Positions 9,886 through 47,230 of a DNA stretch of 47,815 nt are shown here, one piece after another (within the stretch, counting starts at the first letter, position 1; each line of letters opens with the position of its first letter). Where the stretch lies: the NCBI GenBank assembly GCA_038087875.1, contig JAXLNO010001955.1, positions 124,001 to 171,815 of the forward strand. The letters run 5' to 3'. Made by a program: the position numbers and the translations under genes. The notes under the pieces are model-generated. The model worked only from the letters and a program-made list of their open reading frames with translations, had not been told where the DNA came from and did not search any database. This stretch comes from Malacoraja senta (lineage: Eukaryota).

Positions 9886-9989
9886 ATTACGCCCAGTGGA
9901 AGGCAGGAGGCAGAGAAGGGAAGCACTCGGACCCAAAATGTAGGGGAGAAAGAAGAAAAAGATAATAAACAGAGAATAAGTGGTGGTGG

Positions 9990-21609: not shown

Positions 21610-21870
21610 AGCCTCACACACTGATCTACTACTACACCCTGAACCACGGGAGTACTCATCTACCAGAATATAGTGTTGTGGGTGTTCTGGACGGTTGTGA
21701 GATACAGTATTATGACAAAAACATGGTCATTACAGTTCCAAGACAGAAATGGATGGCGGCTGCATTTGACAGGAATTACTGGGTAACAAATACGGTCTCT
21801 GAAACTGGTTTCCATGGAATCATCAAAGGGCAAGTCGATGAATGGATGCAGAGGCAGAACGAAACAGCAA
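21610..21870 (+). CDS. MHC class I-like heavy chain, alpha1 domain exon (261 bp, phase 1-1)
   Basis: TTGTCTTTGTGTCTAG| ... |GTTAGT. (E)PHTLIYYYTLNHGSTHLPEYSVVGVLDGCEIQYYDKNMVITVPRQKWMAAAFDRNYWVTNTVSETGFHGIIKGQVDEWMQRQNETA. Class I hallmarks H3, Y7, T10, G26, D29, P..KW, Y59-W60, N86 sequon. Confidence 0.92.
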
Positions 21871-22750
21871 GTTAGTTCATTCATTTCAATACAATTGGAG
21901 TGTGATCAATGTTCATAAAAAAACATCTCAAAGAAATTTCTCGCTGTGCCAGAGACCCAGGTTTGATCCCGACTACATGTTCTCCCTGTGAACACAGATA
22001 TTTCCTCCAGGTGCTCCGGTTTCATCCCATATCTTGAAAACGTGAGAGTTTGTAGGTTAATTGGGCTCTGTAAATTACTCTTGTGTGCTGAGAATGGGTG
22101 AGGAAAGTGGGATTACATAGATGTGTAGGAAGGAACTGAAGATGCTGGTTTACAGCAAAGATAGGCACAATGTGCTGGAGTAACTCAGCGGGACAGGCAG
22201 CATCTTTGGATACAAGGAATGGATGACTTTTCAGGTCAAGACCCTTCCTCAGACAGAGTGTTTCCCCTGACTTACTCCAGCATTTTGTGTCCATTTTGGG
22301 ATAACATAGAACTAGTGTGAAAGATGATCGATGGTTGGCATGGAATTGGTGGGCAGAATGGCCCGTTTCCATGCTGAGTTACTAACCTAAGAACTGCAGA
22401 TGCTGCAAATGTGAAATAAAAACCAAAAATGCCATTGTCTGATGGCTTCATTGTCAGTTTATCACCATGGAAACCTGTCATTACCGTATTAGTGATACCC
22501 GCTATGTCCAACCATGCCTCCCACTCCTGTCTGTAACTTACACATTCTCACAATTCTGAAGCATTAATTTTGTTTCTCTTTCCATAGGTTCTGTTGAACC
22601 TGCTGTGTGTTCCAGCATTTTACAAATCATTAAAATGTTGGTGGCTTTTTGAATGGTTAAAATCCCTTGCGTACCTCACCAATTGTTTTTACTTTTATTG
22701 ACAAATTTTGAATGAAATGTTGTGTGAAATATTTAAAGGATAACCTAAAT

Positions 22751-22970
22751 GGCATTGTGGTTCAGCCGTAGTGTTGCTGCCGTAGTGCCAGAGACCCAGG
22801 GTTGATCCTGGCCTCAGGTGCTGTCTGTACATAGTTTGTACGTACTCCCCGTGACCTGCGTGGGATTTCCCCGGATGCTCCAGTTTCCTCCCACACTCCA
22901 AGCCTGTATGCCAAAGGGGATCACTGGTCACTGTGGACTCTAAGGGCTGTTTTCGTGCTATATCTCTAAA
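22751..22970 (+). mobile_element. V-SINE/HE1-like SINE (internally deleted)
   Basis: GGCATTGTGGTTCAGCCGTAG...GGTTGATCC...TATCTCTAAA. Confidence 0.7.
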
Positions 22971-23669
22971 TTATCTTGGGCACCAATTGTAAAGTAAGCT
23001 GTCCAAATCCATCTGCACCACACTTGTATATCCATATAAGTTGCAATTGGACATGTTTTATATTGTAAATCAATAAGTCCTATCACCATTACTGTGTTAA
23101 TTCAATGACATTCGTAGTGTACCATTGAACAAAGCAGGACCAGGCGTGGGGGAACCATGGTGAGGTGGGGGACAAAGGAGGACCTGGTGTGGGAGACTTT
23201 ATAACTTTGTCGGTGCCCTTTATGTGAAGAATCTTGACATACGTTGGGTTTACAAAACAAAGACTTTCACTGTGACTTGTCACATGTCACAATAAAGTAT
23301 CATTCATTCATGATTAATTATTGCTGAAAACATTGCTTTTTGTTACCTCTTCGGTTACACATTAAACACATTATATTATTAATCTTTAAATGGACTAAAA
23401 CAGGGTGAGGGTACAAACAGGGAACAATACATCAAAATATTATGCACTGGGCATAATTTCTATCAATTTTCCACATCTTGCAATATTTATTATTATTTTC
23501 AAATTATATGTGAATACATGTGAATGACATTTATTAGATTATCATCTGATTCATTGAACCATGTTTATTGAATCATATTGCCTTCAAAAATAATTTTTAT
23601 ATTTGCATTATTTATGGTGCGCTTATTATCTGCAACATTGTTATGTTTATGAGATTTATGAGCATATTG

Positions 23670-24600
23670 TCGGGGCTCAAGGGTGGGAACAAGAGGGAGA
23701 GATTGGGCAAGCCAGGGCTTTATTCCATGGAGCACAGGAGGCTGAGGGGTGATCATATAGGGGTGCTTAAAATCATGAGGGGAATTGATAGAGTGTATGC
23801 CCAGAGCCTTTTACCCAGAGAAGGAGAATCAAATAACCAGAGGACATGGGTTTAATGTGAGAGGGGGAAGATTTAATTGGAACTTGGGACAATCTTTGTG
23901 CTCAGAGAGTGGTCAGCATATGGAATGACCTGCCAGAGAATGGAGTTGCGGCAGGTACAATAACAATATTTAATAGACACATGGACAGGGACATGCATAG
24001 GTAGATATAAATGCTGGAGAAACTCAGCGGGTGAGGCAGCATCTCTGGAGCGAAGGAAATAGGCAACGTTTAGGGCCGAAAACCCTTCTTCAGACTGATG
24101 TGAGGGTGGGGGGAATGGGGGGGGGCAGGAAGAAGAAAGGAAGAGGTGGAGTCAGTGGGCTGAGGGAGAGCTGAGAAGGGGAGGAGAAAGTAGGGACTAC
24201 CTGAAATTAGAGGTCAATGTTCATACCGCTGGGGTGTAAACTGCCCAAGCGAAATATGAGGTGCTGCTCCTCCAATTTACGGCGGTCCTCACTCTGGCCA
24301 TGGAGGAGGCCGAGGGTAGAAAGGTCGGATTTGGAATGGGAGGGGGGAGTTGAAGTGCTGATCCACAGGGAGATGAGGTTGGTTGTTGCGAACCGAGCGG
24401 AGGCGTTTGGCGAAACGATCGCCAAGCCTGCGCTTGGTCTCACCGATGTAGAGCAGCTGACATCTAGAGAGAAACGTTTTGAATGATGTCTACCGATTCC
24501 AGGGTAAATGGGACTAGCTTAAATGGGGTATCTTGATTAGCATGGACAAGTTGGGCCAAAGGGCTTGTTTCCCTGCTGTGTGACTCTCTATGACTGCTTT
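23670..24600 (+). mobile_element. Old CR1 3' fragment interrupted by a minus-strand Penelope fragment (about 24010-24470)
   Basis: CR1: LGKPGLYSMEHRRLRGDHIGVLKIMRGIDRV. Penelope: SHSKSDLSTLGLLHGQSEDRRKLEEQHLIFRLGSLHPSGMNID. Confidence 0.8.
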
Positions 24601-24839
24601 ATAGCAAAGAGCGCTGCTGCCTCACAGCGCCAGTGATCCGGGTTCAATCATCTCCAGTGCAGTCTGTGTGGAGTATAAGCATTCTCCCTGTGACAATGTT
24701 TGTTCTCCAGTTTCCTCCCACATACCAAAATGTGCTGAATTAGTAGATTAAGCCACCGCTGCAAATAGAGGTGGATTTGTGGCATTGATAGAAATGAGGA
24801 AGATCCGTTTTGGGGCAAATTAGTGTTGGAATAATTTTG

Positions 24840-24946
24840 TTCTCTGGGTAAAAGGCTCTGGGCATACACTCTATCAATTCCCCTCATGATTTTAAGCACC
24901 CCTATATGATCACCCCTCAGCCTCCTGAGTGGGCTCAGGAGGCTGA
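24840..24946 (-). repeat. 88-bp perfect inverted copy of 23735-23822 followed by a 13-bp snap-back hairpin
   Basis: 24840-24927 is the exact reverse complement of 23735-23822. 24917-24946 = TCAGCCTCCTGAG-TGGG-CTCAGGAGGCTGA. Confidence 0.9.
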
Positions 24947-26672
24947 AAGACCTCTTTCTCTGTCACATGGAATTATGGGCAGTTATTTATCCTTGAATTG
25001 CCTTCTTTCTCATTTTAGTCAACAATGTAAAATTGAACTAATTGTCTGGATTGAACTATTTAACAATTGTAGATGAAAGGAAGAGCAGAGGCTGCTTTCC
25101 TCCAGACACAAAGTGCTGAGGAACTCAACGGGTCAAGCGGCATCTTTGGAGAACATGGGAAGGCAGATATTTCGGGTGAGGATCCTACTTCAGACTGAAG
25201 TTGGGTCACATTAGAACATGCTTTGTACTCACACTCGCAGTCCAGTGTTAGTTTTCAAGGATTTTTTGTTATTCACAGCTTGTAGTTGTTACATATTCAG
25301 CAGAGAGAAGACGAGACAAACTAAAGCACCTGCAAAACTCAACTAAAAGACCGCAGAAAGAAGCTTGAAAAGAAGGCTCTTATCTAAACAACGTACTTTC
25401 AAGAGAGAGTTAGATTTAGCTCTTAAGGCTAAAGGAATCAAGGGATATGGGGGAAAAGATTAGTTAAAACAAATGTAGGTCCCTTGCAGTCAGAAACAGG
25501 TGAATTGATCATGGAGAACAAGGACATGGCAGACCAATTGAATAACTACTTTGGTTCTGTCTTCACTAAGGAAGACTTAATTAACTGCCGGAAATAGCAG
25601 GGGACCGGGGGTCAAATGAGATGGAGGAACTGAGTGAAATCCAGGTAGCCGGGAAGTGGTGTTAGGTAAATTGAATGGATTAAAGGCCGATAAATCCCCA
25701 GGGCCAGATAGGCTGCATCCCAGAGTACTTAAGGAAGTAGCCCCAGAAATAGTGGATGCATTAGTGATAATTTTTCAAAACTCTTTAGATTCTGGAGTAG
25801 TTCCTGAGGATTGGAGGGTAGCTAATGTAACCCCGCTTTTTAAAAAGGGAGGGAGAGAGAAAACGGGGATTACAGGCCAGTTAGTCTAACATCGGTAGTG
25901 GGGAAACTGCTAGAGTCAGTTATTAAAGATGGGATAGCAGCACATTAGGAAAATGGTGAAATCATTGGACAAAGTCAGCATGGATTTATGAAAGGTAAAT
26001 CATGTCTGACGAATCTTATAGAATTTTTCGAGGATGTAACTAGTAGAGGGAGAACCAGTGGATGTGTTATATCTGGACTTTCAGAAGACTTTCGACAAGG
26101 TCCCACATTAGAGATTAATATACAAACTTAAAGCACACGGTTATGGGGGTTCAGTATTGATGTGGATAGAGAACTGGCTGGCAGACAGGAAGCAAAGAGT
26201 AGGAGTAAACGCGTCCTTTTCAGAATGGCAGTCAGTGACTAGTGGGGCACCGCAAGGCTGAGTGCTGGGACCCCAGCTATTTACAATATATATTAATGAT
26301 TTGGACGAGGGAATCGAATGCAACATCTCCAAGTTTGCGGATGACACGAAGCTGGGGGGCAGTGTTAGCTGTGAGGAGGGTGCTAGGAGGCTGCAAGGTG
26401 ACTTGGATAGGCTGGGTGAGTGGGCAAATGCAAGGCAGGTGCAGTATAATGTTGATAAATGTGTCCACTTTGGTGGCAAAAACAGGAAAGTAGACTATTA
26501 CCTGAATGGTGGCCGATTAGGAAAAGGGGAGATGCAACGAGACCTGGGTGTCATGGTACACCAGTCATTGAAAGTAGGCATGCAGGTTCAGCAGGCAGTG
26601 AAGAAAGCGAATGGTATGTTAGCATTCATAGCAAAAGGATTTGAGTATAGGAGCAGGGAGGTTCTACTGCAG

Positions 26673-26770
26673 GTACACAAAATTGCTGGAGAAACTCAGC
26701 GGGTGCAGCAGCATCTATGGAGCGAAGGAAATAGGCAACGTTTCAGGCCGAAACCCTTCTTCAGACTGCA
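26673..26770 (-). mobile_element. Single hammerhead-motif repeat unit with 12-bp target-site duplication
   Basis: GTTCTACTGCAG at 26661-26672 and 26771-26782; the uninterrupted CR1 at about 2351 has one copy. Insert (minus strand) contains CTGAAGA-A-GGGT-TTCG-GCCT-GAAAC-GTT. Confidence 0.85.
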
Positions 26771-27200
26771 GTTCTACTGCAGTTGTTCAGGGTCTTGGTG
26801 AGACCACACCTGGAGTATTGTCTACAGTTTTGGTCTCCTAATCTGAGGAAGGACATTCTTGCCATAGAGGGAGTACAGAGAAGGTTCACCAGACTGGTTC
26901 CTGGGATGTCAGGACTTTCATATGAAGAAAGACTGGATAGACTCGGCTTGTACTCGCTAGAATTTAGAAGATTGAGGGGGGATCTTATAGAAACTTACAA
27001 AATTCTTAAGGGGTTGGACAGGCTAGATGCAGGAAGATTGTTCCCGATGTTGGGGAAGTCCAGAACAAGGGGTCACAGTTTAAGGATAAAGGGGAAATCT
27101 TTTAGGACTGAGATGAGAAAAACATTTTTTACACAGAGAGTGGTGAATCTCTGGAATTCTCTGCCACAGAATGTAGTTGAGGCCAGTTCATTGGCTATAT

Positions 27201-28911
27201 ATATTTTTTATTTTTTTATTTTTTATTTATTTTTTAGAAGTATTTTACATTACAGTAATCTGCAATAACGTAAATTTATACAGTTCTTGTACCACTTCTG
27301 TTTTTCAACTTTAATAGAAAAGAAGAATAGAAAGAACTAGCAAGGACAGTCAGTGAGTGAATGAAAAAGTGGTCCAGGAACACACATGTGAACCTAAACC
27401 ACAAGAAATAGTTAAAGAAGAAAAGAAAAAAAGAGAAAAAAGAAAATAAGATAGGACAATATGAAAGGGATGTGCCTTTTTCTTATCTGTACTCACCCCT
27501 CGCCAGGACCTAAAACCATTTATTATCAACATTTTGTTGCACCCTATGTTTGTAATAGGTCGATATATGGAGACCAAATCTTTTGGAATTGGTCTTGTTT
27601 ACCTGCTAGGAGGAATCTCATATCTTCTAGATGTAACAATTCCGACATATTAGAAGTCCACATTTTTATTGTTGGCGTAGGAGCATTTTTCCAAAATTTC
27701 AGTATTAATTTTTTTTGCCGTTATTAAGCCATAACTAAGAAAACTCCTTTGAAACAAAGTCAGCTCCAAACTTGCTTCTATTGTTCCAAAAATAATCAGT
27801 TCTGCATTCGGTTTCAGTTTTATTTAAAATAATTTAGTGAAAATTTCAAAAATTTCATTCCAAAATTTTTGAACTTTTATACAAAAAACAAAAGAATGTG
27901 CTGTAGTTGATTCTTGGACTAGGCATTTATCACAGTTTGCAGAGGTATTTGGGTAAAATTTACTTAATTTAGCTTTTGAATAATATAATCTATGTAAAAT
28001 TTTAAATTGAATCAGAGTATGTCTTACGTTAATCGAACATTTATGCACATATAATAGATGTTTATCCCAACTCTCTTTCGAGATTTTTATAGCTAGTTCC
28101 TGTTTCCATTCTCTTCTGATCCCGTCCGATGATGGAATTTCTATATTTAAAATGGAATTATATAGGTATGATATTAAATTAGCTGATTCCGCTTTTATAT
28201 TCATTATCCCATCTAATAAGTCAGGAGAGATATTTTGATATTCCCGTGTATACTTTTTCAAATAGTCACGTAGTTGGAAATATTTAAAATATTGATTATT
28301 ATTCAAGTTATATTTAAGTTGTAATTGGTGAAATGTTAAAAAACTTCCGTTATCATACATATCTCCAAACGTTTTAATTCCTGCTCTTTCCCAATTTATA
28401 AAAGCTCTATCTATCATAGAAGGTTTAAACGAAGGATTATTCATTATAGGTGAAAGAAGTGATAGATTTCTTAATTTTAACAATAATTTTATTTGTTTCC
28501 AAATTCTAATTGTACTGTGAATAATTGGATTTTTACTATATATTGTATTCTTTATTTTTGTTGGTGAGAGAAGGATCGCTCCTATGTTAAAAGGGGAGCA
28601 GTCCTCTCTCTCCATTACTATCCAATCCATCTGCTGGGCCGAATTGTCCAACAGGTGAATCATATTTTTGACATTTGTGGCCCAGTAATAATATAAAAAA
28701 TTGGGGAGTGATAATCCACCAAATTCCTTAGGTTTACACAAATGTTTTCTTTGGATTCTGTGGGATTTATAGTCCCATATAAAATTTATAATATCAGCAT
28801 CCAATTTTTTAAAAAACATTTTGGGTAAGTATATCGGTATTGACTGGAATAGATATAAAATTTGTGGTAAAAAGATCATTTTTATAGCATTTATTCAGCC
28901 TATAAGAGACA
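27201..28911 (-). mobile_element. 5'-truncated L1-clade LINE (ORF2 C-terminus, 3' UTR, A-rich tail)
   Basis: ORF 27824-28879 with LPQILYLFQSIP, GGLSLPNF, and CDKC..HSFVFC zinc knuckle. 13-bp TSD TCATTGGCTATAT at 27188-27200 and 28912-28924. Confidence 0.93.
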
Positions 28912-29696
28912 TCATTGGCTATATTTAAGAGGGATTTAGATGTGGCCCTTGTGGCTAAAGGGATCAGGGGGTATGGAGAGAAGGGAGGTACAGGATACTG
29001 AGTTGGATGGTCAGCCATGATCATATTGAATGGCGGTGCAGGCTCGAAGGGCCGAATGGCCTACTCCTGCACCTATTTTCTGTGTGTCTATGTTTCTAAA
29101 AGCAGGAATGGGGTACTGATTCTAGATGCAGGCATGATCATATTGAATGGCGGTGCTGGCTCGAATGGCCGAATGGCCTACTCCTGTGCCTATTTTTCTA
29201 TGTTTCTATAATTAGTATACATTCGGCTATTTGTGGTGTTTCTTGAAAACACGAAGACGAGAGAATGTAAAGGATCTGCAGAACAACTAAAAGACTGCAG
29301 AAAGCAGCTTGAAAAGGAGGCTCTTCATCGATACAACATAATTATGTTTTATTCAGCTATCATTGTTTGTAGAGTTTCTTATTGGAATGAAAACATCATC
29401 CAAGTTTTGACCTTTCCTTATTACTCCTGGTCCCAGGGGCATGGTTGGCATTAGCTCATTACCTTCATCCTAATAAAGGGTTGTTGTTCACAGTTGTGCC
29501 TAGATTTTTATCAATTATAACCTTGAGTTCACAAACTGTTCTTTGTCTCTGGGCTAAAGTTCACAGACTCTCCTTTTCAAGGAGTGAGCAGTTTTAAGCA
29601 AACTGACTTCAGCAAATCCTTACAAATTCCATCAACCCCCCCCCCCCCCACTTTGATTCATCAATCAATGCCAGAGGGAATGAATCATCTAAGTAA

Positions 29697-30370
29697 AGGG
29701 GCCTGTCCCACTTACGTGTCCTTGGAACGCAAATTACGCGTTGAGCCGCGATGGTCTGACGAAGGTCGGGCGCGATTACATGCGTACGCACAGCCGTCTG
29801 GAGCGTGTGACACATTATTTGAAGATGGACACAAAGCTGGAGTAAGCCAGTGGGACCGGCAGCATCTCTGGAGAGAAGCAATGGGTGACGTTTCATGTCG
29901 AGACTCTTCTTCAGTCTGAAAAGAAGGGTCTTGACCCGAAACGTCACCCATTGCTTCTCTCCAGAGATGCTGCCGGTCCCGCTGACATTTTGTGTCTATC
30001 TTCAATTTTCTTGGCCCCGCTCTGGGAGTAGAAGTGGGGGCGGATCCGGACCTCAACGGCCGTGAGCCCCAGGCCGAGTTCGGCGATCGTTTGCCTGCTT
30101 CTGCTCCTGTTGAAAGTGAGACTTTGCGTCGCGCCAGGGTCTTGGGCCTGTCCCACTTTGGCCGTCAGTTCCGCGACAGGCCGTTGGCGCGCGAAGATTT
30201 AGTTCACTACAAAATTATCGGAGCCCCGCGCGATGTCGCGCACAACTCCATACCCCTCCGCGCTTCCAAGTGGGACCGGCCCCGCGCGGCCATACGATGC
30301 CCGTGCGCCTCAACGTGACCACAAGGTCGCATAATTTGTGTGCCAAGGACACGTAAGTGGGACAGGCCCT
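29697..30370. mobile_element. PIF/Harbinger-type MITE
   Basis: TIRs AGGG(G)CCTGTCCCACTTACGTGTCCTTGG at both ends; TAA on both flanks (29694-29696, 30371-30373); CpG-rich body. Confidence 0.85.
29819..30005. repeat. 187-bp fold-back of two back-to-back hammerhead-repeat units
   Basis: TTGAAGATGGACACAAA ... TTTGTGTCTATCTTCAA, symmetry centre TCAG-T-CTGA near 29915. Confidence 0.9.
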
Positions 30371-30734
30371 TAAAAATATCAAGGAAAGGTAGCGCAGCTA
30401 CACATCACTGGATATCTTTAACCTGTTCAATGCCACCGCCGAGTACACTAGGGGTCATGGCCAATAGTGAAAAATAAACTTGGCAGTGAACAGCTTAATG
30501 GTCTCCATATTTTAGAGAAAGCCTTCAATGCCCATGAGGGGTGAGCCTTATTATATCTATGTTTCTCTAAATATAGGAAGCACTTTTGTGGTAAAAGATG
30601 GGTCAGCTCGGGCCTCGAAAAGATCCAACCTTATGTGCAGCTTTATATTTGTTTATATGCAATAAGCAAAAAGAACACAATAGAAGATAAAACATGATAA
30701 TAACTATAAGCAAAGCCAAGAGATCGTGGCCTTA

Positions 30735-30926
30735 CACGAGTTGCTGCCTTGCAGCACCAGAGACCCTGGTTTGAACCTGACTACGAGTGGTGACTGTACG
30801 GAGTTTGCATGTTCTCCCCGTAACCTGTGTGGCTTTTCTCTGAGATGTAGGTAAATTGGCTTGGTGTAAATGTAAATTGTCCCTAGTATGGGCTGAAGGG
30901 CCTGTTTCAGCACTGTATCTCCAAAG
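30735..30926 (+). mobile_element. V-SINE/HE1-like SINE whose tail is split by the hAT element
   Basis: Ends ...GCACTGTATCTCCAAAG; the tail resumes CTCTAAAGCTTAAAACTAAA at 35551. Confidence 0.75.
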
Positions 30927-35635: not shown

Positions 35636-38300
35636 ATGGTTTCATGGTTAGTTTATTGTCACATATACCAATTAAGGTACATTGAAATGCAGACTACCAT
35701 ACACCATACTAAAAAAAAGCAACAAGACACACAATAACATAAAAGTTAACATAAACATCCACAACAGAGGAGCCCGCACGTTCCTTACTGTGATGGAAGG
35801 CAATAAAGTCTAATCTCCTTCCTCTTTATCTCCCGCAGTCGGGGCAATCAAACAATCTGCAGTCGGTGGTCGAAACCCCCCGTTGAGGAATCGAAACTCC
35901 CACGTCGGAGCGGTCGAAACTCTTGCGGCTTGGAGATCCCGGATGTCGGTCTCGACCGTAGACCACGGGCTCCGCGATGTTAAAGTCTTGCAGGCTCTCA
36001 CAGTTGGAGCCCTAAAGTCGATCCCCGACAGGGATCGCGAGCTCCATGATGGTAAGTCCACAGGCTCCTGCGATGGATCTCCCGGTCGATCTCTAGCAAA
36101 GGCCGCCATTCATCAATGTTAGGCCGCATTGTGGACGGAGATACGATACAGAAAATATCGCATCTACGTCGAGGTAAGAGATTAGGAAAAGTTTCCCACA
36201 ACTCCCCCAACCCCCACCCCCAAAACAAGCTAAAGAACACTAAAGACTAAACCAAAAGACTCAACACATCTCAGGAAATTCCCTTTTAAAATAGCTATGG
36301 AAAAATTCAAATATTTAGGAATTGAGATTACTAGAAATTACCATGATATGTTTAAAGCTAATTATAATCCCCTACTTAAGAAATTAAATAATCTGATTAA
36401 ATTTTGGAAAACACTTCCGATGTCCTTAATAGGTAGGATAAATGCTATAAAAATGATTTTCTTACCACAAATCAATTACCTATTTCAATCAATACCTATA
36501 TATCTCCCAAAAAAGTTTTTCAAAAAACTGGACTCAGACATTACAAATTTTATATGGGATTACAAATCCCACAGAATACAAAGAACACACCTTAACAAAC
36601 GAAAAGAGTTGGGGGGTCTAGCGCTCCCTAACTTTATGTATTATAACTGGGCAGTAAATATTAAAAATATGATTCACCTGCTGGACAATTCTGCCCAGCA
36701 GGTGGACTGGATTATAATGGAAAAAGGGGATTGCTCCCCGAATAATATAGGAGCGATTATTCTCTCTCCAATAAATTTGAATAATAAAAATTATAATAAA
36801 AATCCAATTATATATAGCACTATTAGAACATGGAAGCAAATAAAACAGAATCTAAAATTAAGAAACCTATCTCTCTTAATACCAATAGTCAATAACCCAT
36901 CGTTTAAACCTTCAATCATAGATAAAGCATTTATACAATGGGAAAGAATGGGAATTAAAACGCTCGAAGATCTGTATGAATTAGAAAAATTACTATCATT
37001 CCAACAACTACAACTGAAATATAATTTGAAAAATAATCAATATTTTAAATATCTACAAATCTGTGACTATTTGAAAACACACACAAAAGATTATTATAAT
37101 ATGCCTTCCGACTTACTAGATGAAGCAATGAAGACAAAGGCGGAATCAGTTAATTTAATATCATACTTATATAATATCATCTTAAATATAGAAATACCCA
37201 CAACAGATGGAATTAGAAGAGATTGGGAACAAGATCTAGGTATAAAAATTTCAAAAGAGAGTTGGGATAATCATTTATTACAGGTGCATAAATGCTCGAT
37301 CAACGTACGACATACGCTTATCCAATTTAAAACATTACATAGATTATATTATTCAAAAACCAAACTAAATAAAATCTTTCCTAACGTCTCACCAATCTGT
37401 GATAAATGTATATGTCAAGAAGCTACCATAGCACATTCTTTTGTTTTTTGTACAAAAATCCAAAAATTCTGGTTTGAAATATTTGATATTTTTTCAAAAT
37501 TAATCAAAATAAAACTGGTACCAAAACCAGAATGGATTATTTTTGGAATATCGGAAGGTATTCCTGAATTAAACGTGTATCAGAAGAATTTACTCAATTA
37601 TGGGCTAATAATGGGAAAAAAGCTTATACTTAAATTCTGGAAAAATGCGCCCACACCAACAATAAAAATGTGGACATCAAATATGTTGGAAACATTACAT
37701 CTGGAAGAGATGAGATTCCTCCTAGTAGGCAAAGTAGATCAATTTCAAAAGACGTGGTCTACGTTTTTGGACCTATTACAAGTATGAGGTGCAATAGTAA
37801 TTTAGAAAAACAAATAAATAAATAAAAGGTATCTGGACCTGGTAATGGGAGGTAAAATAAAAACAGACTTGGTTGGTAGTTCCTTCTCTATGAAGTATGG
37901 TATAAGAGTTATAATAGAGCGATTGTTCCTTCTTTCTTTCTCTTTTTTTTTCTAGGGTCTATTTTCTAACTTTACTTCCTTCTCTAACTTCTTTTCTAAG
38001 GGGCTTTCTTTTCCCAACACTCTTTTGCACTTCACAACCTTTGCGCACTTTCTTCACTTTTCTTACTTCTTTCTTTTTCTTTCTTAAAGTTTAAAAAAGT
38101 GAAGCGGTACAAAAAATGTATTAATATATACGTGTTGTACATTACTGTAATCTACCGTACTTCTAAAAAATAAAAAAAATAAAAAAAAATTAAAAAAAAA
38201 GAACACTAAAGAATATACATTTAACACGTACAAAACAGACACAAAGAAGGAAGGGACAGACGACTTTTGGCGAGGCAACCATTGCAGCAAAAGGTGGATT
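35636..38300 (-). mobile_element. Unclassified CpG-rich retroposon, copy 2, split by the L1 at 36247-38197
   Basis: Tail TATGTGACAATAAACTAACCATG on the minus strand; same conserved blocks as copies 1 and 3. Confidence 0.55.
36247..38197 (+). mobile_element. 5'-truncated L1-clade LINE with 496-codon uninterrupted ORF2 C-terminus
   Basis: FKYLGI, SLIGRINAIKMIFLP, GGLALPNF, CDKC..HSFVFC; A-rich tail. 15-bp TSD AAAGAACACTAAAGA at 36232-36246 and 38198-38212. Confidence 0.95.
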
Positions 38301-38397
38301 GCTTAAGGATATAGAAGGGAATATGTGCTTGGAGTTTGGCGAGGTTTGGTTTCACCAAGGAAGACATGTAGAATAGTAAGGACCATTAATAGTAAGT

Positions 38398-39195
38398 ACA
38401 TCATAAAATCCTCCAACATTTTTGCCACCTCCAACGGGATCCCACTACTGATCACATCTTCCCATCTCCACCCGTTTCTGCTTTCCGCAGAGACCGTTCC
38501 CTCCGAAACTCCCTGGTCAACTCGTCCCTTCACACCCAAACCACCCGCTCCCCGGATACTTTCTCCTGCAACTGCAGGAGATGCAACACCTGTCCCTTTA
38601 TGTCCCCCCCTCGACTCCGTCCAAGGACCTAAAGTCTTTCCAGGTGAGGCAGAAGTTCACTTGCACCTCTTCCAACCTCATCTACTGTATCCGCTGTTTC
38701 AGTTGTCAACTTCTCTACATCAGTGAGACCAAGCGCAGGCTCGGCGATCGTTTTGTTGAACACTTCCCCTCAGTCCGTCTTACCCTACCCGATCTCCCGG
38801 TGGCTCAGCACTTCAACTCCCCCTCCCATTCCCAATCTGACCTTTCTGTCCTGGGCCTCCTCCATTGTCAGAGTGAGGCCCAGCCCAAATTGGAGGAACA
38901 GCACCTCATATTTTGCTTGGGTAGTGTATACTCCAGCGGTATGAACATTGACTTCTATTACTTTCGATAGCCCTTGATTTCTCTCTCCATCCCCTCCCCC
39001 TTCCCAATTCTGCCACCAGTCTTACTGTCTCCGCCGACATTCTATCTTTGTCCCTCCCCTGACATCAGTCTGAAGAAGGGTCTCGACCCAAAACAATGCC
39101 CATTCCTTCTCTCCAGGGAAGCTGCCTGACCCGCTGAGTTACGCCAGCATTTTGTGTCTCTACGATTTTAACATCTGCAGCATCTGCAGTTCTTT
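38398..39195 (+). mobile_element. Penelope-like element 3' part (linker, GIY-YIG endonuclease, tail with degenerate hammerhead motif)
   Basis: SAFRRDRSLRNSLV, CNCRRCNTC, FTCTSSNLIYCIRCFSCQLLYISETKRRLGDRFVEH, LEEQHLIF, GMNIDF. Tail CAGTCTGAAGAAGGGTCTCGACCC at about 39067. Confidence 0.9.
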
Positions 39196-39319
39196 CTTAC
39201 ACATGGAGAATCAATGTGGAGAATGCTAACATGCAGGGACACTTTGAAGTTAAGCAAGAAGGAGATGTTGGATCACTTGAAGAGAAATGTGGATAAATCC
39301 CCAGGATAGAGGGGTGTAG

Positions 39320-39800
39320 TGGATGATAATAATAATCGTTGAAAACATTAGTGCCGTGCTGGTTTCCGATGGGCACGGTGACGGACGCACCACACATCTC
39401 TCCTCCATGCAACTGGCAAGCTCCTCTTTTATCTCTACACATGCGTCTTCCATCAACGTCTTCTGCATCATCTTGATTGGCCGTCCTGGGTCAAGTCTTC
39501 CATGGGTGGGTTCCCACAGCACAACCTTGTTTGCTGGCATTTCTGGGTGGCGGAGCCAGTGACCTGCGAGCCTCATCCTTCTCAACGTGATCTTCTCGGT
39601 CAGAGGTGGATTCTCCCCATAGAGCTGGGCGTTGGTGATGTGGTCCCTCCATCTGACATTTTGAACTTTTCCGAGCATTCGGGTGTAGGTACCATCGAGA
39701 GACTAGGACAGTGCTGGAGTGAGAGTCCATGCCTCACACCCGTACAATAATATGGTCTCTACAGTTGTACGGAAGGCCAAATATTCAGGCTGTAGTTCAG
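39320..39800 (-). mobile_element. RTE-clade LINE 3' fragment
   Basis: ILLYGCEAWTL, LDGTYTRML, WRDHITN, RRMRLAGH, WEPTHG..GRP; short ATT/ATC repeat tail. Confidence 0.85.
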
Positions 39801-39936
39801 TGACAAGTAGAGTTCTGCAGGGATCTGTGCTGTGACCCTTGCTACTTGTGACATATATAAATGACTTGGACCCTGGTGTTCAGAAATTACCCAGTCATAA
39901 CAATTAATCAAATAATGATTTTTATTTTTATTTCAG

Positions 39937-40210
39937 ATTATCACTACGTTCAAGGACAGTTTGGTTGTGAGGTGAACGATCACAGTCCCACTGTAGGGAT
40001 ATTGAAGTTGGCTTTTGATGGAAGATATGCATTTAGTTTTGATAAGGACAAACTAAAGTGGACGGTGCATGATCCAATAGCTGAGCTTCAAAGAGAAATG
40101 GGACAAGAATGAAAAAATGAACCGTTATTTCAAGAGCTTGTTAGAACATGACTGTGTGGATCTATGGCTTACATACTATGCAATTGGAAAGACATACCTG
40201 ACCAGAAAAG
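39937..40210 (+). pseudogene. MHC class I-like alpha2 domain exon (274 bp, frameshifted)
   Basis: TTTTATTTCAG| ... AAAAG|GTGAGT. YHYVQGQFGCEVNDHSPTVGILKLAFDGRYAFSFDKDKLKWTVHDPIAE, then after a shift near 40086-40089 FKEKWDKNEKMNRYFKSLLEHDCVDLWLTYYAIGKTYLTRK. C101/C164 pair present. Confidence 0.9.
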
Positions 40211-40524
40211 GTGAGTTCAGAACAAAGGATGTTGTTTTGTGATGGTAGGCAATGAGTAATATTTCACTCTGAGGCAATGAGTAATATTATCTCTGACCCA
40301 ATCATGACAGAGGGAAAGGTCATTCGGCCCATTGATTCTATGCTAGTTTTCTATGCAATGTCGACAAACTGTTCCACAGCTCTCTCTCACAACTTGCACT
40401 CAGCTCCCTCGGATTCTCCTTGCATTCAGCTCTACGACGGATAATTTGCAATGTCCAACTAACTCACCGGCACGTCTTTGGTATACGGGACAAAACTGGA
40501 GCACATGGAGGAAGCCAACTGAGT

Positions 40525-42510
40525 CATAAGGTCATAAGTGATGGGTGCAGCATTAGAACATTCGGCCCATCAAGTCGACTTCGCCAGTCAATCATGGCTG
40601 ATCTATCTCTCCCTCCTAACCCCATTCTCCTGCCTTCTCCCCATAACCCCTGACGTGCATACTAATCAAGAATTAAAAATATCCATTGACGGACTCCACA
40701 GCCTTCTGTGGTAAATAATTCCACAGAATCACCACCCTCTGACAAAATAAATTCCTCCTCATCTCTTTCCTAAAGGAATGTCCTTTAATATTGAGACTAT
40801 GACCTCTCGTCATAGACTCTCCCACCATTGGAGACATCCTCTCCACATCCACATCTATCCAAGCCTTTCACTATTTGTTTGTTTTTAAAATATTTTTATT
40901 AGAAGCATGTGCATATCATACTACAAACATTTCTTATATATCAATCCTACTTAGCTAATAGGTGGGAGTCCAGCTATCAAAATAATAGTGGTCCTCCTTT
41001 ATCAATTGTATATTAAATCTGCTTCTATTTAGTTTTTTTTTATAGATAGAAAGTGAGAAATTAAAAAAAAAAGGCATGAAAAAGAAGAATGGAATAATTT
41101 ACCAATAATACAACTTTGGAGATAGGTCCGTAGGTTATAAAGCATAACTATTCATCTAATCCTGAGCTTGGATTTCAGTCAGATTCCTATGCTGAACCAA
41201 TTTACCCTTTCAAAAAATCAATAAATGGAGACCATATTCTATTAAATAATTCATGTTTTTCAATTAAGACAAGTCTAGTTCTTTCCAAATGTAAGGTCTC
41301 CGACATTTCCATAATCCACATTTTAATTGTGGGGGTTATAGGACCTTTCCAAAATTTTAATATTAATTTTTTCCCAATTATTATACTATAATCAAGAAAG
41401 TTTCTTTGGTTTATTGTAAGTCTTAGGCTTTGTTCTGATATTCCTAATATTATTATGAGTCGGGATCCAATTGGGTATTGACTAATTCAGAAATTATTCT
41501 GAAAATGTCCGTCCAGAAATTTTTGATTTTTATACAATTTACAAAGGTATGAGTTAAGTTAGCCTCTAAATGCTGGCATTTATCACAAATAGGAGAGATA
41601 TGTGGGAAGATTCTATTTAATTTTGTTTTAGAATAATGTCATCTATGTAATACTTTAAATTGTATTAAGGCATGTCTGGCATTTAATGAGCATTGATGTA
41701 TATATTGTAGACTTTCGTCCCAAATATCTTTCGTTATGGGTTGGCCTAATTCATGTTCCCATGTGTGTCTATATAAATCCGTCGGCGGGACCTCACTATC
41801 TAAGAGGGTATTATAAATATGAGATATTAATTTTTCTGTATTAGGATGTTTATTCAAACATTCATCAAGGATTTCTGGTTCCCTAGTTCTGTAATCTTGT
41901 GTATTTGATTTAATGTAATCTCTAATTTGTAAATATCTAAAAAAGTTATTTGAGTGTGGTCCGTAAATCTGTTGTAACCCCTGAAATTACAGAAAAGTGC
42001 CTTTCCTATAAAGATGTCCCATCTTTTTAATTCCATAATTTTTCCATTGTGTAAAGCCTTTATCCAACATGGAAGGTTTGAATAAAGGGTTGTTTATAAT
42101 GGGGAGACAGTGACAATTATCCAATTTTAAAGTCCTTTTTAATTGTTTCCAAATTCGTATACCACTATATATTATAGGATTTTCACTATAGGTGTTTTAA
42201 TGCAATTTTGTGGGAGCAAACATAATCGAACCAATTTCAAAAGGCAAACAGTCTTTCACTATTTTGTATGATTCAATGAGGTCCCCCCTTATTCTTCTAA
42301 ACCCCAGCAAGTACAGGCCCACTGCCATCAAATGGTCATCATATGTTAACCCATTCAATCCTGGGATCATTCTTGTACACCTCCTCTGGACCCTCTCCAG
42401 AGCCAGCACATCCTTCCTCAGATATGGTGCCCAAAATTGCTCACAATGCTCCAAATGTGGCTTGACCGGCGCCTTATAGAACCTCAGCATTACATCCCTG
42501 TTTGACAGGG
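40525..42510 (-). mobile_element. CR1 3' fragment split by an L1 insertion
   Basis: HLEHCEQFWAPYLRKDVLALERVQRR...RGDLIESYKIVK at 42253-42510; the rest of the CR1 tail lies at 40525-40876. Confidence 0.85.
40877..42252 (-). mobile_element. 5'-truncated, decayed L1-clade LINE
   Basis: DCLPFEIGS..NPIIYSGIRIWKQ, CSLNARHALIQFKVLHR, homologous to the other two L1s. 12-bp TSD CTTTCACTATTT at 40865-40876 and 42253-42264. Confidence 0.88.
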
Positions 42511-42825
42511 AGAAAGTGTAATTGATGTCTTTCATATTAGTTAACCATGGATTTTCTTGACCACAGTTGACAGCCCCTAATGGGATTGCATGTCTATCAC
42601 ACGTCTCTATAGAGCACAGCGTTAAGCTTCGAAGGGCAAAATTTACACGAGATGTGCAGGTCAAGTGTTTTTTTGCACAGAGAGAGCTTGATACCTAGAA
42701 TGCGCTACCAGGAGTGGTGGTAGAGGAAGACATGATAATGGTGCTTAAGAAAGTTTTGGACAGGCTCGTGGGTATGCAGGGAATACAAGGATATGGAACA
42801 CATGCAGGCAGTGGAGATGAGTTTT

Positions 42826-43120
42826 GGTTTAGTTTAGAGATAGAGTATGGAAACAGGATCTTTGGGCCACTGAGTCTGCACTGACCAGCAATTGCCCATT
42901 CACTATTTTTGTCCTACAAGCTAGGGACAATTTACAGAAGCCAATTAACCTACAAACCTGCACGTCTTTTGTATTTGGGAGGAAACCGGAGCCCCCAGAG
43001 AAAACCCACAAGGTGACAGAGAGAACGTACAAACTCCGTCCAGACAGCACTCTAGTCAGGATCGAACCCGGGTCTCTAATGCTGTAAGACAGCCACTCTA
43101 TCACTGCGCCACTGTTTTGC
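42826..43120 (-). mobile_element. V-SINE/HE1-like SINE
   Basis: B-box GGTTCGATCC on the minus strand; family tail. Confidence 0.85.
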
Positions 43121-43429
43121 CTTAGTTTAACTTGGTATCCTGTTCGACATGGACATTGCAGGCTGAAAGTCCTGTTCTTGTACTGTTCTATGTTCTATAT
43201 ATTCTCATTGGACATGGCAGAGTTTTCCACTCCTCCAGCCTCCATGTTGAATACTTACTCCCAGTTTAAATCTGATTCAATTAGTCAATCCATTTCTCCC
43301 TCCCCTCCTGCCCTGATCCCCATTCTATATTTTGAAATAGTCATTCCCTTTTTCACTCCCTGGTCTGTCTACTATCCCCACAACTTTCCTCTACTTTCCT
43401 GTCTTGGTGCATGCAACATCTATCCATTT

Positions 43430-43790
43430 ACCTCTTCCCTTCCCACTGTCCATAGACCCAGGTAGTTCTTCAAAGTGAAACAGCGTGAAACACTTGCACT
43501 TCCAGTCAAATCTACTGCATATGGTTTTCATGACGTAATCTTCCACATCGCATCAATGAAACAAATTGAATGGCTGCTTTCTGGAGAACCTGCATTCAAT
43601 CTATGGGACTTTCTAAGATTCCTAATTCCTGCCACTTTAATTCTCCATTCAACACCCACCATGATCCATCCATCTGTACCTCTTACACTAGGATAACAAG
43701 GGTGACAGTAACCTTGAGGACCAACAACTCAGCTTCTGTCAGGACATGTTGCAGCCTTTCACACTCCATTCCACATTCAACGAGTTGTAT
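43430..43790 (+). mobile_element. Highly decayed Penelope GIY-YIG fragment
   Basis: Weak nucleotide similarity to 38620-38900 (TTCAAAGTGAAACAG...TGCACTTCCAGTCAAATCTACTGCAT...CATTTTAATTCT-like blocks). Confidence 0.45.
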
Positions 43791-43814
43791 TCCCTGTCAA
43801 TAAAAGAACTGGTC

Positions 43815-44300
43815 ATTTCATAAGTTCATGTTCATTTATTGTCACATACACCAATTGGTGTAGTAAAATTCACTGGCCAGGTCAGTCATACAATTTTAAA
43901 AAGCAACAGACTCAAAAACACATTTTGACATAAACATCCATCATAGTGACTCCTACACATTCCTCACTGTGATGGAAGGCGAAAATAAAGTTCCAAGTCC
44001 TTCCCTTGTTGTTCTTCCTTGGTCGGGGGCCTCGAGCCCCCCGTTGAATGGACGGTCTTGAGTCCCGTAGCCGGCGGCGTTCGGGCCCTCCGCGTCGAGG
44101 TGATCAGCTCCCGCATCGGGGGATTGTCAGCTCCCCTGCGCCGGGCGATCGAACCTCGCGTCGGGGCTGGACGAACCTTCTGTGGCATTGGAGCTCCCGA
44201 CTAGCCTCTCCCGAGACTGGGAGCCCTTGATGGTAAGTCCGCAGGCAAGGGATCTGCTCCGATTGTAAGTCCACACCCCGTGGTGGGGCTCACGACAGTC
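43815..44300 (-). mobile_element. Unclassified CpG-rich retroposon, copy 3
   Basis: CACTGTGATGGAAGGC, GATGGTAAGTCC; tail TATGTGACAATAAATGAAC on the minus strand. Confidence 0.55.
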
Positions 44301-45100
44301 CTTTTCAACTGTTAAGTTGAAGTCAGAAAGAACAGATGCAAGAAGTATGAAGAAGGACACCAAGCTGAAACATTACGTAACCATGTCTTCCAGATGCTGC
44401 CTGAGCCACTGAGTTACACCTGCACGTTTTTGTGTTTTTTAATTACAGTTAAGTTATCCAGCTGCAAAATCAGGACAGCCTGACCTACTTGAGTACTGCA
44501 GTATGTGCTGCATTTTATATAACTCTGTTTAGTTTCATGCATGCAGAGATCCAGTGAAATGGTTTGGATGGAACAGCAGATGCTGGACACCCCGTCCCTT
44601 CTCTCCAGAGATGCTGCCTGTCCCGCTGAGTTACTCCATCTTTTTGTGTCTATCTGCAGTGAAATGGTTGTTCTGCATTCTCCCCAGTCAAGTCATACTG
44701 TACATAAGTACAATTCGTCCTCTTCTGGAACAGCACGCAGTGATCCACCACATTCCAGGACTATCTTGCAGCTTCCAAGTCTCTGAGAAGTCTGATTTTG
44801 CCCTAAGGAAATACCCAATTTCACATTTTCTCATGTTAAAGCCCAGTGCCATAACAGCACTGAATTGATGAAGTAGAGGCACGTGCCTCAGTTTAAGTTT
44901 TTCTGTTTCAAGATTGTGATCAAACCCTCGTCACTGGAACTGTGTCGCAGTGCCACCCATTACGTATCAGTCCCAATTATCTTTCAACATGCTGGAATCA
45001 CTTGTTTTTTAATCCTTTTTAGACTTTTTTTCATGAATTGTTCTGCATAAACAGTTATGCTACAACAAAGTTAAGCGCAGCTACCACTTAGTTCCAGAGA

Positions 45101-45233
45101 CGTAACAACACAAGAGATAGTGTTGGAAGAATGATCAAACTCACACATAGTGGTTAGAATCCATAGTCTTTTATTAGTAACTCTGCAGAGGAAACACAAG
45201 GTGCTTTCTTCTCAGCTTGCTTACTACCAGTCT

Positions 45234-45279
<46 letters not shown>

Positions 45280-45328
45280 TCTAATAAGCCTGTGGGCGGA
45301 GCCACAGTATGAGTGACACTAATCTACA
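45101..45328 (-). mobile_element. Probable solo LTR containing an (AG)n microsatellite
   Basis: Minus strand starts TGTAG and ends GTTACG (CA changed to CG); AATAAA near the 3' end; GC box GGGCGGAGC; flanks GAGA/GATA could be a 4-bp TSD with one mismatch. Confidence 0.5.
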
Positions 45329-45390
45329 GATAGGCACAGGGATAAGTTTCGGTTTATTATTGTCACGTTTAGTTTCGAGGTACAGCATGA

Positions 45391-45660
45391 AAATAGGCCT
45401 TTTGGCCCACTGAACCTGTGCTGACTAACGACCACCCAAACATTAGTTCTATCCTACACACTAGGGACAATTTACAGAAGCCCAAAAACTTACAAACCTG
45501 CACGTCTTTGAATGTGACGGAACTGTAGCACCCGGAGATAACTCACATGGTCACAGGGAGAATGTATGAACTCTATATAGACAGCACCCATTGTCAGGAT
45601 TGAACTTTGGTCTGTGGTACTGTAAGGCAGCAACTTTCCCTCTGCGCCACTGTGCTGCCC
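45391..45660 (-). mobile_element. V-SINE/HE1-like SINE
   Basis: Reverse complement of the family at 13618. Confidence 0.8.
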
Positions 45661-46449
45661 ATGTACTGAGGTAGTGTGTAAAGCTTTGTTTTGCATGCTA
45701 TCCAATTGGATGAGGTAACAAAATACATATATATGATCATCAAACTCAAGAACTGTAGGTAGAGCAAAGGGGAAGGTGCAGAGTGTGGCATGTAGTTCTC
45801 AGCAATGTAGCACAGCAGTTCCATTAGATAAGTGTTTCGACACGAAACGTAACACATTCCTTCTCTCCAGAGATGCTGCCTGACCCGTTGAGTTACTCTA
45901 GCATTTTGTGTCTATCTGCGGTTTAAACCAGCATCTACAGTTCCTTCCTGCATAGTTCTATAAACAAAGTCCACTGTCTGTAATGGGGTAGTGGTCAATT
46001 GGACAGTACCGTAGCTTATGGAACGATCATTCAGAAGCCTGATTTTCTCCTCGGTTATCAAGTTTCCGAGTAAGCCATTTGGTCCTCTAACCTGCCCACC
46101 ATTCAATATGACCATGGCTGACGTTCCTCAGGCATCAACTCCTGTTCGATGTCAGTTCCTCATTGCACTCAGTTCTCCAATTTAAGTTTAATTAAGTTAA
46201 CTACCGCCACATTAAATGCTTCCAATGATTTTGTCTTCACAAATCTCTGGCGCCAGAGAATGACCACACTCTGCAAAAAGAGATTTTGTAAACAAATGAC
46301 TGGTCTCTTTTATCTCTTATTGAAGAGGAGTGAAAATACTGCCAATTTTAAGCTTGTCCCCTCCCCAATTGACCCTCATTTCGTAACTTGTCAATTATTT
46401 ATTATTGTCAATAATATGCCCTAGTGAAAAGATTTGCCGTTGGTATTAG

Positions 46450-46775
46450 TTTATTATTGTCACATGAACTGTGATATAGTCAAAAGTTTGTCTGTGTGTT
46501 ATCCAATCAGATCATACTACACATGTGCAATCAAGCCATCCACAAGTAGAACAGTGCAAAGAGAAAAATTCTCAGAGTGCAGAATATCGGGTTACAATAT
46601 CATAGCATTACAGTTACAGAGAAAGTGCAGATCAAAAAGAGTTGCAAGGATCACAATGAGATTGGTTGGAAGATCAGGGCAACATCTTATCTTACATGAG
46701 AACCATTCAGTAGTCCAATAACAGTGGGGAAGAAGCTGTTCCTGAATTTAATGGTACGTACTTTCAAACTTTCTT
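46450..46775 (-). mobile_element. Rex1-type LINE 3' end
   Basis: GGGAAGAAGCTGTTC block shared with 15840-15855; tail TGTGACAATAATAAAC. Confidence 0.65.
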
Positions 46776-46963
46776 GTGTACTGTCTTAACAGGGAGCGTG
46801 CGATCCCTTTTAAACCACGTGGTTGGTTGATGGTGACGAAAGAGGCAAAATGGGGCAGATGTGGACAGTAACTTGGTTGTTGTAGTGGACTGAAGAATAT
46901 TTTGTGGTGGGTGACTGTGCAAGTTTTACTGAAGATGAAAATAACCATCTTACTGTCTTGTAG

Positions 46964-47230
46964 TTTCCCCTGAGGTCACTCTCGCTGCCCGCCCTGATGA
47001 TCATTCAGTCCTGTACTGCACTGTGTTTGGATTTTACCCACCGGCCATCAATGTCAGCTGGTTGCAGAATGGTCAACATGTCTCTGAGACAAAATCTTCT
47101 GGGGTCACACCCAACAACGATGGAACATATCATCTAAGGTCTGTCCTTGAGTATGATCCGTATGATGGGAAACAGTATTCCTGTCATGTCGATCACAGCA
47201 GCCTGCCCGGTGGGAAGACCATCATCTGGG
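46964..47230 (+). CDS. MHC class I-like alpha3 (Ig C1-set) domain exon (267 bp, phase 1-1)
   Basis: CTGTCTTGTAG| ... TGGG|GTAAGA. (V)SPEVTLAARPDDHSVLYCTVFGFYPPAINVSWLQNGQHVSETKSSGVTPNNDGTYHLRSVLEYDPYDGKQYSCHVDHSSLPGGKTIIW. C1-set motifs C..FGFYP..I.VSW, P..DGTY, YSCHV.H. Confidence 0.95.

What the first reader, a model, noticed from the sequence alone, without database searches (positions are those of the whole stretch)
21610..47230. Divergent non-classical MHC class I gene with a predicted hydrophobic groove
Manual alignment to HLA numbering: Y7, Y59, R84, K146, W147 and Y171 are kept, but T143 is F, Y159 is L, Y123 is A, W167 is L and D122 is Y. Groove-facing positions are largely hydrophobic or aromatic (Y9, V24, F70, I73, I74, W81, F99, L114, L116, M152, Y155, F156). 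Several beta2-microglobulin contacts (Q96, D119, G120, P235, D238) and the N86 glycan remain. This points to a beta2m-associated molecule binding a non-peptide or very hydrophobic ligand. Cartilaginous fish have several named class I lineages (UAA, UBA, UCA, UDA, UEA and others). I cannot assign this sequence to one, so it may be a poorly described or new lineage.
Basis: partly seen in the sequence, partly recalled or inferred. Interest (0 to 1): 0.8.

Follow-up and report, generated by a model that had tools for sequence, protein, structure and literature searches.

The report
Broken skate copy of UGA gene
The three exons are real, but they are a frameshifted, incomplete copy of UGA, a shark-and-ray MHC class I-like gene already named, crystallised and described as a CD1-like lipid binder; it is not a new lineage, though skates carry dozens of copies.

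Summary
Three phase-1 exons with AG/GT borders (21610-21870, 39937-40210, 46964-47230, + strand) encode the alpha1, alpha2 and alpha3 domains of an MHC class I-like chain.

The lineage is not new. It is UGA, found in all sharks and rays searched. A shark UGA structure is deposited as PDB 9CH4 ("shark nonclassical MHC class I, UGA", released 2026-03-18). A 2025 review calls UFA and UGA CD1-like lipid binders.

This copy is broken. Its alpha2 exon lacks 2 bases (CC, after 40085) that 40 sister exons keep, which gives a stop at 40110-40112. Thirteen other copies share the deletion, and short-read unitigs show both forms. No leader exon was found, and the contig ends 585 bp after alpha3, so the membrane and tail exons are missing.

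One thing is less expected. This skate genome holds at least 54-110 UGA exon copies, although UGA is described as single- or low-copy. A conserved neighbour gene, possibly UFA, is amplified with it.

This scan had already called other copies in this genome "frameshifted skate UGA".

The parts
21610..21870 (+). alpha1 exon (261 nt, 87 codons, phase 1 at both ends). Open, and 93% identical to Amblyraja radiata UGA.
   Evidence: phmmer best hit 2e-44.
21871..39936 (+). Intron of 18.07 kb between alpha1 and alpha2, filled with LINE fragments (RT and zf-RVT ORFs at 26262-27268, 27824-28879 on the minus strand, and 36297-37787).
39937..40210 (+). alpha2 exon, 274 nt here against 276 nt in intact sister copies. 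The reading frame changes inside it.
40085..40086 (+). Site of the 2-bp deletion: GAG|CTTC here, GAG-CC-CTTC in 40 other copies. It removes the codon for the residue before F143.
   Evidence: Alignment of 30 copies. Pattern counts of 14 deleted and 40 intact. Both forms appear in short-read unitigs.
40110..40112 (+). Premature TGA, 8 codons after the deletion and 98 nt before the exon's donor site.
40211..46963 (+). Intron of 6.75 kb between alpha2 and alpha3, with repeat-derived ORFs.
46964..47230 (+). alpha3 exon (267 nt). Ig C1-set domain with both cysteines. Open.
   Evidence: Pfam C1-set 4.8e-20..
47231..47289 (+). Read-through of the alpha3 donor (..W GKNVKYSFIDNHYLLLFPF stop). The same tail ends a Leucoraja RefSeq model (P0157). 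It may be an intron-retention isoform or an annotation artefact.
47290..47815 (.). Last 526 bases of the contig. The transmembrane and cytoplasmic exons are not on it; in sister copies the TM exon lies about 10 kb after alpha2.
   Evidence: Contig C1955 has 171815 bases, which is the window's end.

Best explanation
The window holds the alpha1-alpha3 part of one copy of UGA. UGA is an MHC-linked, non-classical class I lineage kept in sharks, rays and skates since before they split.

Intact members encode a membrane-bound class I-like chain. Two peptide-end anchors (T143, Y159) are replaced by F and L, and the groove-lining motif GFHG(I/L)IKGQ is nearly invariant. By the deposited shark structure and specialists' statements, such a molecule holds lipids in the manner of CD1 (inferred for skates). 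Pairing with beta2-microglobulin is presumed from the class I fold and was not tested. Orthologues carry a YxxI tail suited to endosomal sorting.

This copy cannot make that protein. A 2-bp deletion in alpha2 shifts the frame and gives a stop 8 codons later. No leader exon was found on the contig. The assembly breaks before the membrane exon.

The deletion is inherited. It is shared by 14 copies that differ elsewhere, so this is a pseudogene subfamily spread by segmental duplication within a large skate-specific UGA array.
For: Lineage:
- Closest proteins are skate, sawfish, ray and shark 'class I-like' models at 54-94% identity.
- The Stegostoma orthologue hits PDB 9CH4 at 6.7e-170, with about 88% of aligned residues identical.
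- 9CH4 is titled 'Crystal structure of shark nonclassical MHC CLASS I, UGA'.
- In the tree the UGA clade has 100/100 support, the skate clade 100/99, and the window copy has a 0.014 end branch.

Function of the lineage: PMC12562908 and PMC10751288. Anchor changes.

Breakage:
- The exon is 274 nt against 276 nt in intact copies.
- Counts are 14 deleted and 40 intact.
- Deleted copies differ in alpha1 (97-100% amino-acid identity) and at other alpha2 sites.
- Run X2 holds both forms as separate unitigs (depth 1321 and 1087), and run X1 holds a 556-nt contig identical to the window.
- None of the 72 leader matches lies on C1955, and none lies within 31.6 kb upstream.
- The contig ends at the window's end.

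MHC linkage of the lineage: the Pristis orthologue P0167 lies at 14.02 Mb of the chromosome that Verissimo et al. tabulate. There it is marked MHC-Ib, between TRIM39-like genes and COL11A2/RXRB.
Against: - Lipid binding is taken from a review's personal communication and a PDB title. No paper on the structure was found in the library.
- The leader could lie further upstream. In Amblyraja it is 32 kb before alpha1, and I could read only 31.6 kb.
- Runs X1 and X2 may come from the very animal that was assembled. They exclude an assembly slip, not a somatic or individual-specific variant.
- No RNA run was found for this species, so silence of this copy is inferred.
- My AlphaFold model is only middling (pLDDT 70.5, with the alpha1 helix below 50). 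It says nothing about the groove.
Confidence: 0.85

Rival explanations
1. It is a working gene, and the missing CC is an assembly or homopolymer error (CCC read as C).
For: The site is a short C run. The other exons are open. Contig-level assemblies of repeated arrays are error-prone.
Against: Fourteen copies on fourteen contigs share exactly this deletion, although they differ at other sites. Short-read unitigs of run X2 carry both forms at similar depth, and X1 carries the deleted form.
Confidence: 0.04
2. It belongs to a new or undescribed cartilaginous-fish class I lineage.
For: No database record carries a U-lineage name. All are automatic 'F10 alpha chain-like' or 'MR1-like' names. Pfam does not recognise alpha1 alone.
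Against: PDB 9CH4 names its shark orthologue UGA. The review PMC12562908 lists UGA among known lineages. The tree gives one well-supported clade.
Confidence: 0.02
3. The large copy number is an assembly artefact (uncollapsed haplotigs or duplicated contigs), and the skate really has only a few UGA genes.
For: Three other contigs are 100.00% identical to the window over 3.26 kb, and five more are 99.7-99.85% identical. Most copies sit on small unplaced contigs that break inside the unit.
Against: Other copies differ by 2-15% in the flanks and 2-6% in alpha1 protein. The alpha2 unitig depth in run X2 is about 2400, and the intron flanks are equally deep. That would need dozens of copies at any usual coverage, but the depth was not calibrated. 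Rhinoraja longicauda has 10 listed proteins (11 accessions) of one 90% cluster on one chromosome.
Confidence: 0.1
4. The deleted copies still matter. They could act as sequence donors for gene conversion among the intact copies, or yield a truncated alpha1-only product.
For: The alpha1 and alpha3 exons of the deleted copies remain open and nearly unchanged.
Against: Those copies are so young (flanks 99.7-100% identical) that open exons need no selection. The stop lies 98 nt before the next splice junction, which by the usual rule (stop more than ~50 nt upstream of a junction) would mark the transcript for nonsense-mediated decay (inference).
Confidence: 0.05

Closest known systems
UGA, shark and ray non-classical MHC class I (PDB 9CH4; named in PMC12562908)
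   Same: Same lineage. The Amblyraja protein that is 94% identical to the window copy is 56-58% identical to 9CH4. The clade follows the species tree. F143 and L159 are shared. The lineage is MHC-linked in sawfish.
   Different: This copy is frameshifted and incomplete. UGA is described as single- or low-copy, yet here it has 54 or more alpha2 exons and about 110 membrane exons.
CD1 (lipid-presenting class I-like molecules of tetrapods)
   Same: Specialists describe UGA as CD1-like in groove and ligands. Orthologues carry a YxxI tail like CD1b (P0154 and P0156 end ..DYQNI..).
   Different: By sequence and fold ranking UGA is no nearer to CD1 than to MR1 or classical class I. MR1 and fish or bird class I lead the list, and chicken CD1-1 appears only at rank 49. 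Orthology is untested.
UFA, the second CD1-like elasmobranch lineage
   Same: A conserved paralogue (P0006-like, 39-44% identical to UGA) lies 50-70 kb upstream of UGA copies here. It is on the same chromosome or contig as UGA in Pristis, Heptranchias, Stegostoma, Cetorhinus and Mustelus. That fits what is said of UFA.
   Different: No UFA sequence or structure was available, so this is a guess. That gene is not in the window.
Expanded class Ib families (shark UEA and UBA, Xenopus XNC)
   Same: A multigene class Ib family with many pseudogenes.
   Different: The skate copies are nearly identical to each other (alpha1 94-100%), not split into old sublineages. The lineage is a different one.

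Membership tests
UGA lineage | Sequence orthology with the solved shark UGA chain | tested here: met
   9CH4 is the best PDB match. The UGA clade has 100/100 support with the window inside the skate branch.
UGA lineage | Class I chain layout: alpha1, alpha2 and C1-set alpha3 on phase-1 exons | tested here: met
UGA lineage | Peptide-end anchors partly lost and replaced by hydrophobic residues | tested here: met
   F143 and L159 are present. L159 is in every UGA orthologue aligned. Position 143 is F in most and L in the lamniform sharks. Position 143 is F, L or S in the wider set.
UGA lineage | MHC linkage | tested here: inconclusive
   The window's contig is unplaced and carries no marker gene. 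A Pfam class II search of the genome found nothing anywhere. The Pristis orthologue is in the MHC-Ib cluster next to COL11A2/RXRB.
UGA lineage | Single or low copy number | tested here: not met
   About 72 full alpha1 exons, 54 alpha2 exons and about 110 TM exons in this genome. Other elasmobranchs have 1-3.
UGA lineage | Lipid in the groove | not testable with these tools
   Rests only on the statement in PMC12562908 and on the PDB title.
UGA lineage | Tyrosine sorting tail (YxxI) | not testable with these tools
   The tail exon is beyond the contig end. It is present in P0154 and P0156.
Functional gene (any lineage) | Open frame through all coding exons | tested here: not met
   2-bp deletion and TGA at 40110-40112. 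The leader was not found.
Classical class I (UAA-like) | Full set of invariant peptide-terminus anchors | tested here: not met
   T143 is F and Y159 is L.
CD1 family | Closer in sequence or fold to CD1 than to other class I-like groups | tested here: not met
   MR1 and classical class I outrank CD1.

The most novel reading that the evidence does not exclude
Skates have blown up the CD1-like UGA gene, together with its conserved neighbour (perhaps UFA). Other sharks and rays have 1-3 copies; this skate would have an array of some 50-100 units of roughly 85-115 kb, in both tandem and head-to-head arrangement, probably at the end of one chromosome. About three quarters of the alpha2 exons are intact at the deletion site. 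Comparing the window's alpha1 with sister copies gives few amino-acid changes (dN about 0.005-0.012 against dS about 0.03-0.08). That would be an unusually large family of a lipid-presenting-type molecule, and it would contradict its description as single- or low-copy.
Probability: 0.45. Interest if true: 0.55.

Novelty: new member of a known kind. Interest (0 to 1): 0.3.

Why it matters
UGA and UFA bear on whether lipid presentation of the CD1 type is as old as peptide presentation. One more broken copy adds nothing to that question. What may interest specialists is the scale of the skate amplification and its many pseudogenes. It is at odds with the 'single- or low-copy' description. It also offers a natural set of near-identical variants for asking which copies are expressed and what they bind.

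Tried and rejected
- A word-index search with the 86-residue alpha1 piece found nothing, because that tool only returns proteins of similar length. phmmer against representatives then worked.
- Pfam does not see alpha1 or the alpha2 C-half alone.
- The two primary papers on shark class Ib lineages (PMC8454915, PMC7002201) are not held.
- Searching the literature for '9CH4' gave only chance strings. No paper on the UGA or UFA structure was found.
- The supplement of PMC10751288 labels genes only 'MHC-Ib', without lineage names.
- A Pfam MHC_II_beta search of the genome found nothing, also in the controls, so it says nothing about linkage.
- No run on record as RNA holds the exons, so expression in this species is untested. 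Complete 334-residue UGA proteins sit on Logan contigs of 1.4-3.5 kb. That is far shorter than the spliced-out gene, so they are probably transcripts of a closely related skate. This is inference.
- The unitig depth of about 2400 in run X2 could not be calibrated against a single-copy gene, because only one read-laying run is allowed.
- The AlphaFold model of the Amblyraja ectodomain was too weak in the alpha1 helix to judge the groove. It served only to retrieve the PDB titles.
Full report
WHAT IS THERE

- alpha1: 21610-21870, 261 nt.
- alpha2: 39937-40210, 274 nt.
- alpha3: 46964-47230, 267 nt.

All are in phase 1, as in class I genes. The introns are 18.1 kb and 6.75 kb and are full of LINE debris. 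Alpha3 is a C1-set Ig domain (4.8e-20). The alpha2 N-half matches Pfam MHC_I below its cut-off. Alpha1 alone is not recognised by Pfam, but phmmer finds class I proteins with a best E of 2e-44.

I aligned the window copy with its orthologues and with a sturgeon protein named 'MHC class I alpha antigen' that carries the usual anchors. The window copy keeps Y7, Y59, R84, K146, W147 and Y171. It has F at 143 and L at 159.

From Y59 to the end of alpha1 there is no gap, so F70, I73, I74, W81 and the N86-E-T sequon follow directly. F99, L114, L116, D119, G120, Y122 and A123 follow from the GC and DG landmarks.

WHICH LINEAGE

The nearest proteins are automatic 'class I F10 alpha chain-like' models.
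- Skates: Amblyraja (94% over the three domains), Rhinoraja, Leucoraja.
- Further out, at 54-69%: sawfish, stingrays, manta, and sharks of seven orders.

The Stegostoma member matches PDB chain 9CH4_A at 6.7e-170. That entry is titled 'Crystal structure of shark nonclassical MHC CLASS I, UGA' and was released 2026-03-18.

A maximum-likelihood tree gives one clade for all these sequences (100/100). Its branching follows the split between sharks and batoids. The window copy sits inside the skate branch (100/99) on a very short end branch.

Two papers bear on the lineage.
[quoted passage not shown] It adds that crystal structure and mass spectrometry suggest lipids like those of human CD1d, citing a personal communication (PMC12562908).
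- A 2023 paper had announced UFA as CD1-like (PMC10751288).

The lineage is not new.

By sequence and fold ranking UGA is not closer to CD1 than to MR1 or classical class I. 'Works like CD1' and 'is a CD1' must therefore be kept apart.

LINKAGE

The window's contig (C1955, 171,815 bases) is unplaced and ends with the window.

The sawfish orthologue P0167 lies at 14.02-14.06 Mb of the 19.9-Mb chromosome. This is LOC127585887 in the gene table of PMC10751288. There it is marked MHC-Ib, in a row of four class Ib genes between TRIM39-like genes and COL11A2/RXRB. The lineage is therefore MHC-linked in that species. For this contig, linkage is untested.

THIS COPY IS BROKEN

Of 30 alpha2 exons fetched from the genome, 18 are 276 nt and open. 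Twelve, including the window's, are 274 nt. The difference is CC missing after 40085 (GAG-CC-CTTC in intact copies). The frame then runs into TGA at 40110-40112.

Exact-pattern counts over the genome give 14 deleted and 40 intact exons. The deleted copies differ from one another in alpha1 (97-100% amino-acid identity) and at another alpha2 site. So the deletion arose once and was copied.

Short-read data agree.
- Run X2 holds both forms as separate short unitigs, at depth 1321 without CC and 1087 with CC. The flanking unitig is at about 2400.
- Run X1 holds a 556-nt contig identical to the window.
- A related species (X4) has the intact form.

The deletion is therefore not an assembly slip, although X1 and X2 may come from the assembled animal.

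None of the 72 leader-exon matches in the genome lies on this contig. The leader region of sister copies has no counterpart within 31.6 kb upstream of alpha1. This point stays open, because in Amblyraja the leader is 32 kb upstream and I could not read further.

The membrane and tail exons lie beyond the contig end. In the sister contigs closest to the window the TM exon is about 10 kb after alpha2.

THE FAMILY

The genome holds:
- about 72 full-length alpha1 exons at 94-100% protein identity;
- 54 alpha2 exons;
- about 110 TM exons;
- 72 leader exons, about twenty of them with a TGA stop inside.

Most lie on small unplaced contigs. One set lies at 40.58-40.63 Mb of contig C9.

About 45 copies of a second gene, 43-44% identical in alpha1, lie 50-70 kb upstream on the same strand. 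That gene (P0006-like) is itself conserved across sharks and rays at 54-72%. It shares the chromosome or contig with UGA in several species (in sawfish it is probably LOC127585976, just upstream). It is sister to UGA in the tree (100/99). It may be UFA, which I could not test.

Two UGA copies on one contig lie 84-114 kb apart in tandem. Others lie head to head with leaders 17-22 kb apart.

Part of the count is redundancy. Three contigs are identical to the window over 3.26 kb, and five more are 99.7-99.85% identical. Other copies differ by 2-15% in the flanks.

Comparing the window's alpha1 with sister copies gives dN of about 0.005-0.012 against dS of about 0.03-0.08, on small counts. This suggests constraint on many copies.

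Rhinoraja longicauda has 10 listed proteins (11 accessions) of one 90% cluster on one chromosome. Sharks and rays have one to three. The amplification looks skate-specific and does not fit 'single- or low-copy'. Its true size needs calibrated read depth.

EARLIER NOTES OF THIS SCAN

Other copies in this genome were already reported as 'skate UGA'. Two of them were reported as frameshifted by a 2-base deletion. I had reached 9CH4 independently and then verified the name from the PDB title.

VERDICT

This is a real observation and a sound functional guess. The lineage is known and this copy is dead. Interest is low for the finding itself and moderate for the amplification.

Noticed in passing
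not in the window; e.g. G000:C4831:46555-46800, C9:40516877-40517122, C831:99106-99351: A second class I-like gene, 43-44% identical in alpha1, lies 50-70 kb upstream of UGA copies, with about 45 copies. Its orthologues are conserved at 54-72% across sharks and rays and are linked to UGA. It may be UFA.
   Followed up: partly
G000 leader exons, e.g. C1097:151078-151155, C1275:190688-190765, C5151:179679-179756: About twenty UGA leader exons carry a TGA stop inside the signal peptide. Most score alike, which suggests a second inherited pseudogene subfamily.
   Followed up: no
G000:C2638 (leaders at 92641 minus and 110608 plus), C1840, C311, C2421: Some UGA copies are arranged head to head, with leader exons only 17-22 kb apart. 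The array therefore contains inverted as well as tandem duplications.
   Followed up: no
window 20112-23369 versus L002 (C1895), L006 (C4286), L008 (C5981): Three other contigs are 100.00% identical to the window over 3.26 kb around alpha1. They are either very young duplicates or the same locus assembled several times.
   Followed up: partly
Leucoraja erinacea models P0151, P0152, P0168: RefSeq models of LOC129716032 join UGA exons to a 7TM receptor domain (PF00001), or are named 'G-protein coupled receptor 139' while clustering at 90% with UGA. These are probably chimeric gene models in the repeated array.
   Followed up: no
window 47231-47289: Reading through the alpha3 donor gives a 19-residue tail identical to the end of a Leucoraja RefSeq protein (P0157). 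It could be a soluble intron-retention isoform or an annotation artefact.
   Followed up: no
window 33951-35426: A run of ORFs (250, 117 and 83 aa) has no Pfam match and lies inside the 18-kb intron. It looks like a decayed transposase-type gene.
   Followed up: partly
window 7975-10923: LINE remains on both strands upstream of the gene: an APE endonuclease ORF on the + strand (Exo_endo_phos 7e-16) and LINE-like ORFs on the minus strand, not searched against Pfam.
   Followed up: partly
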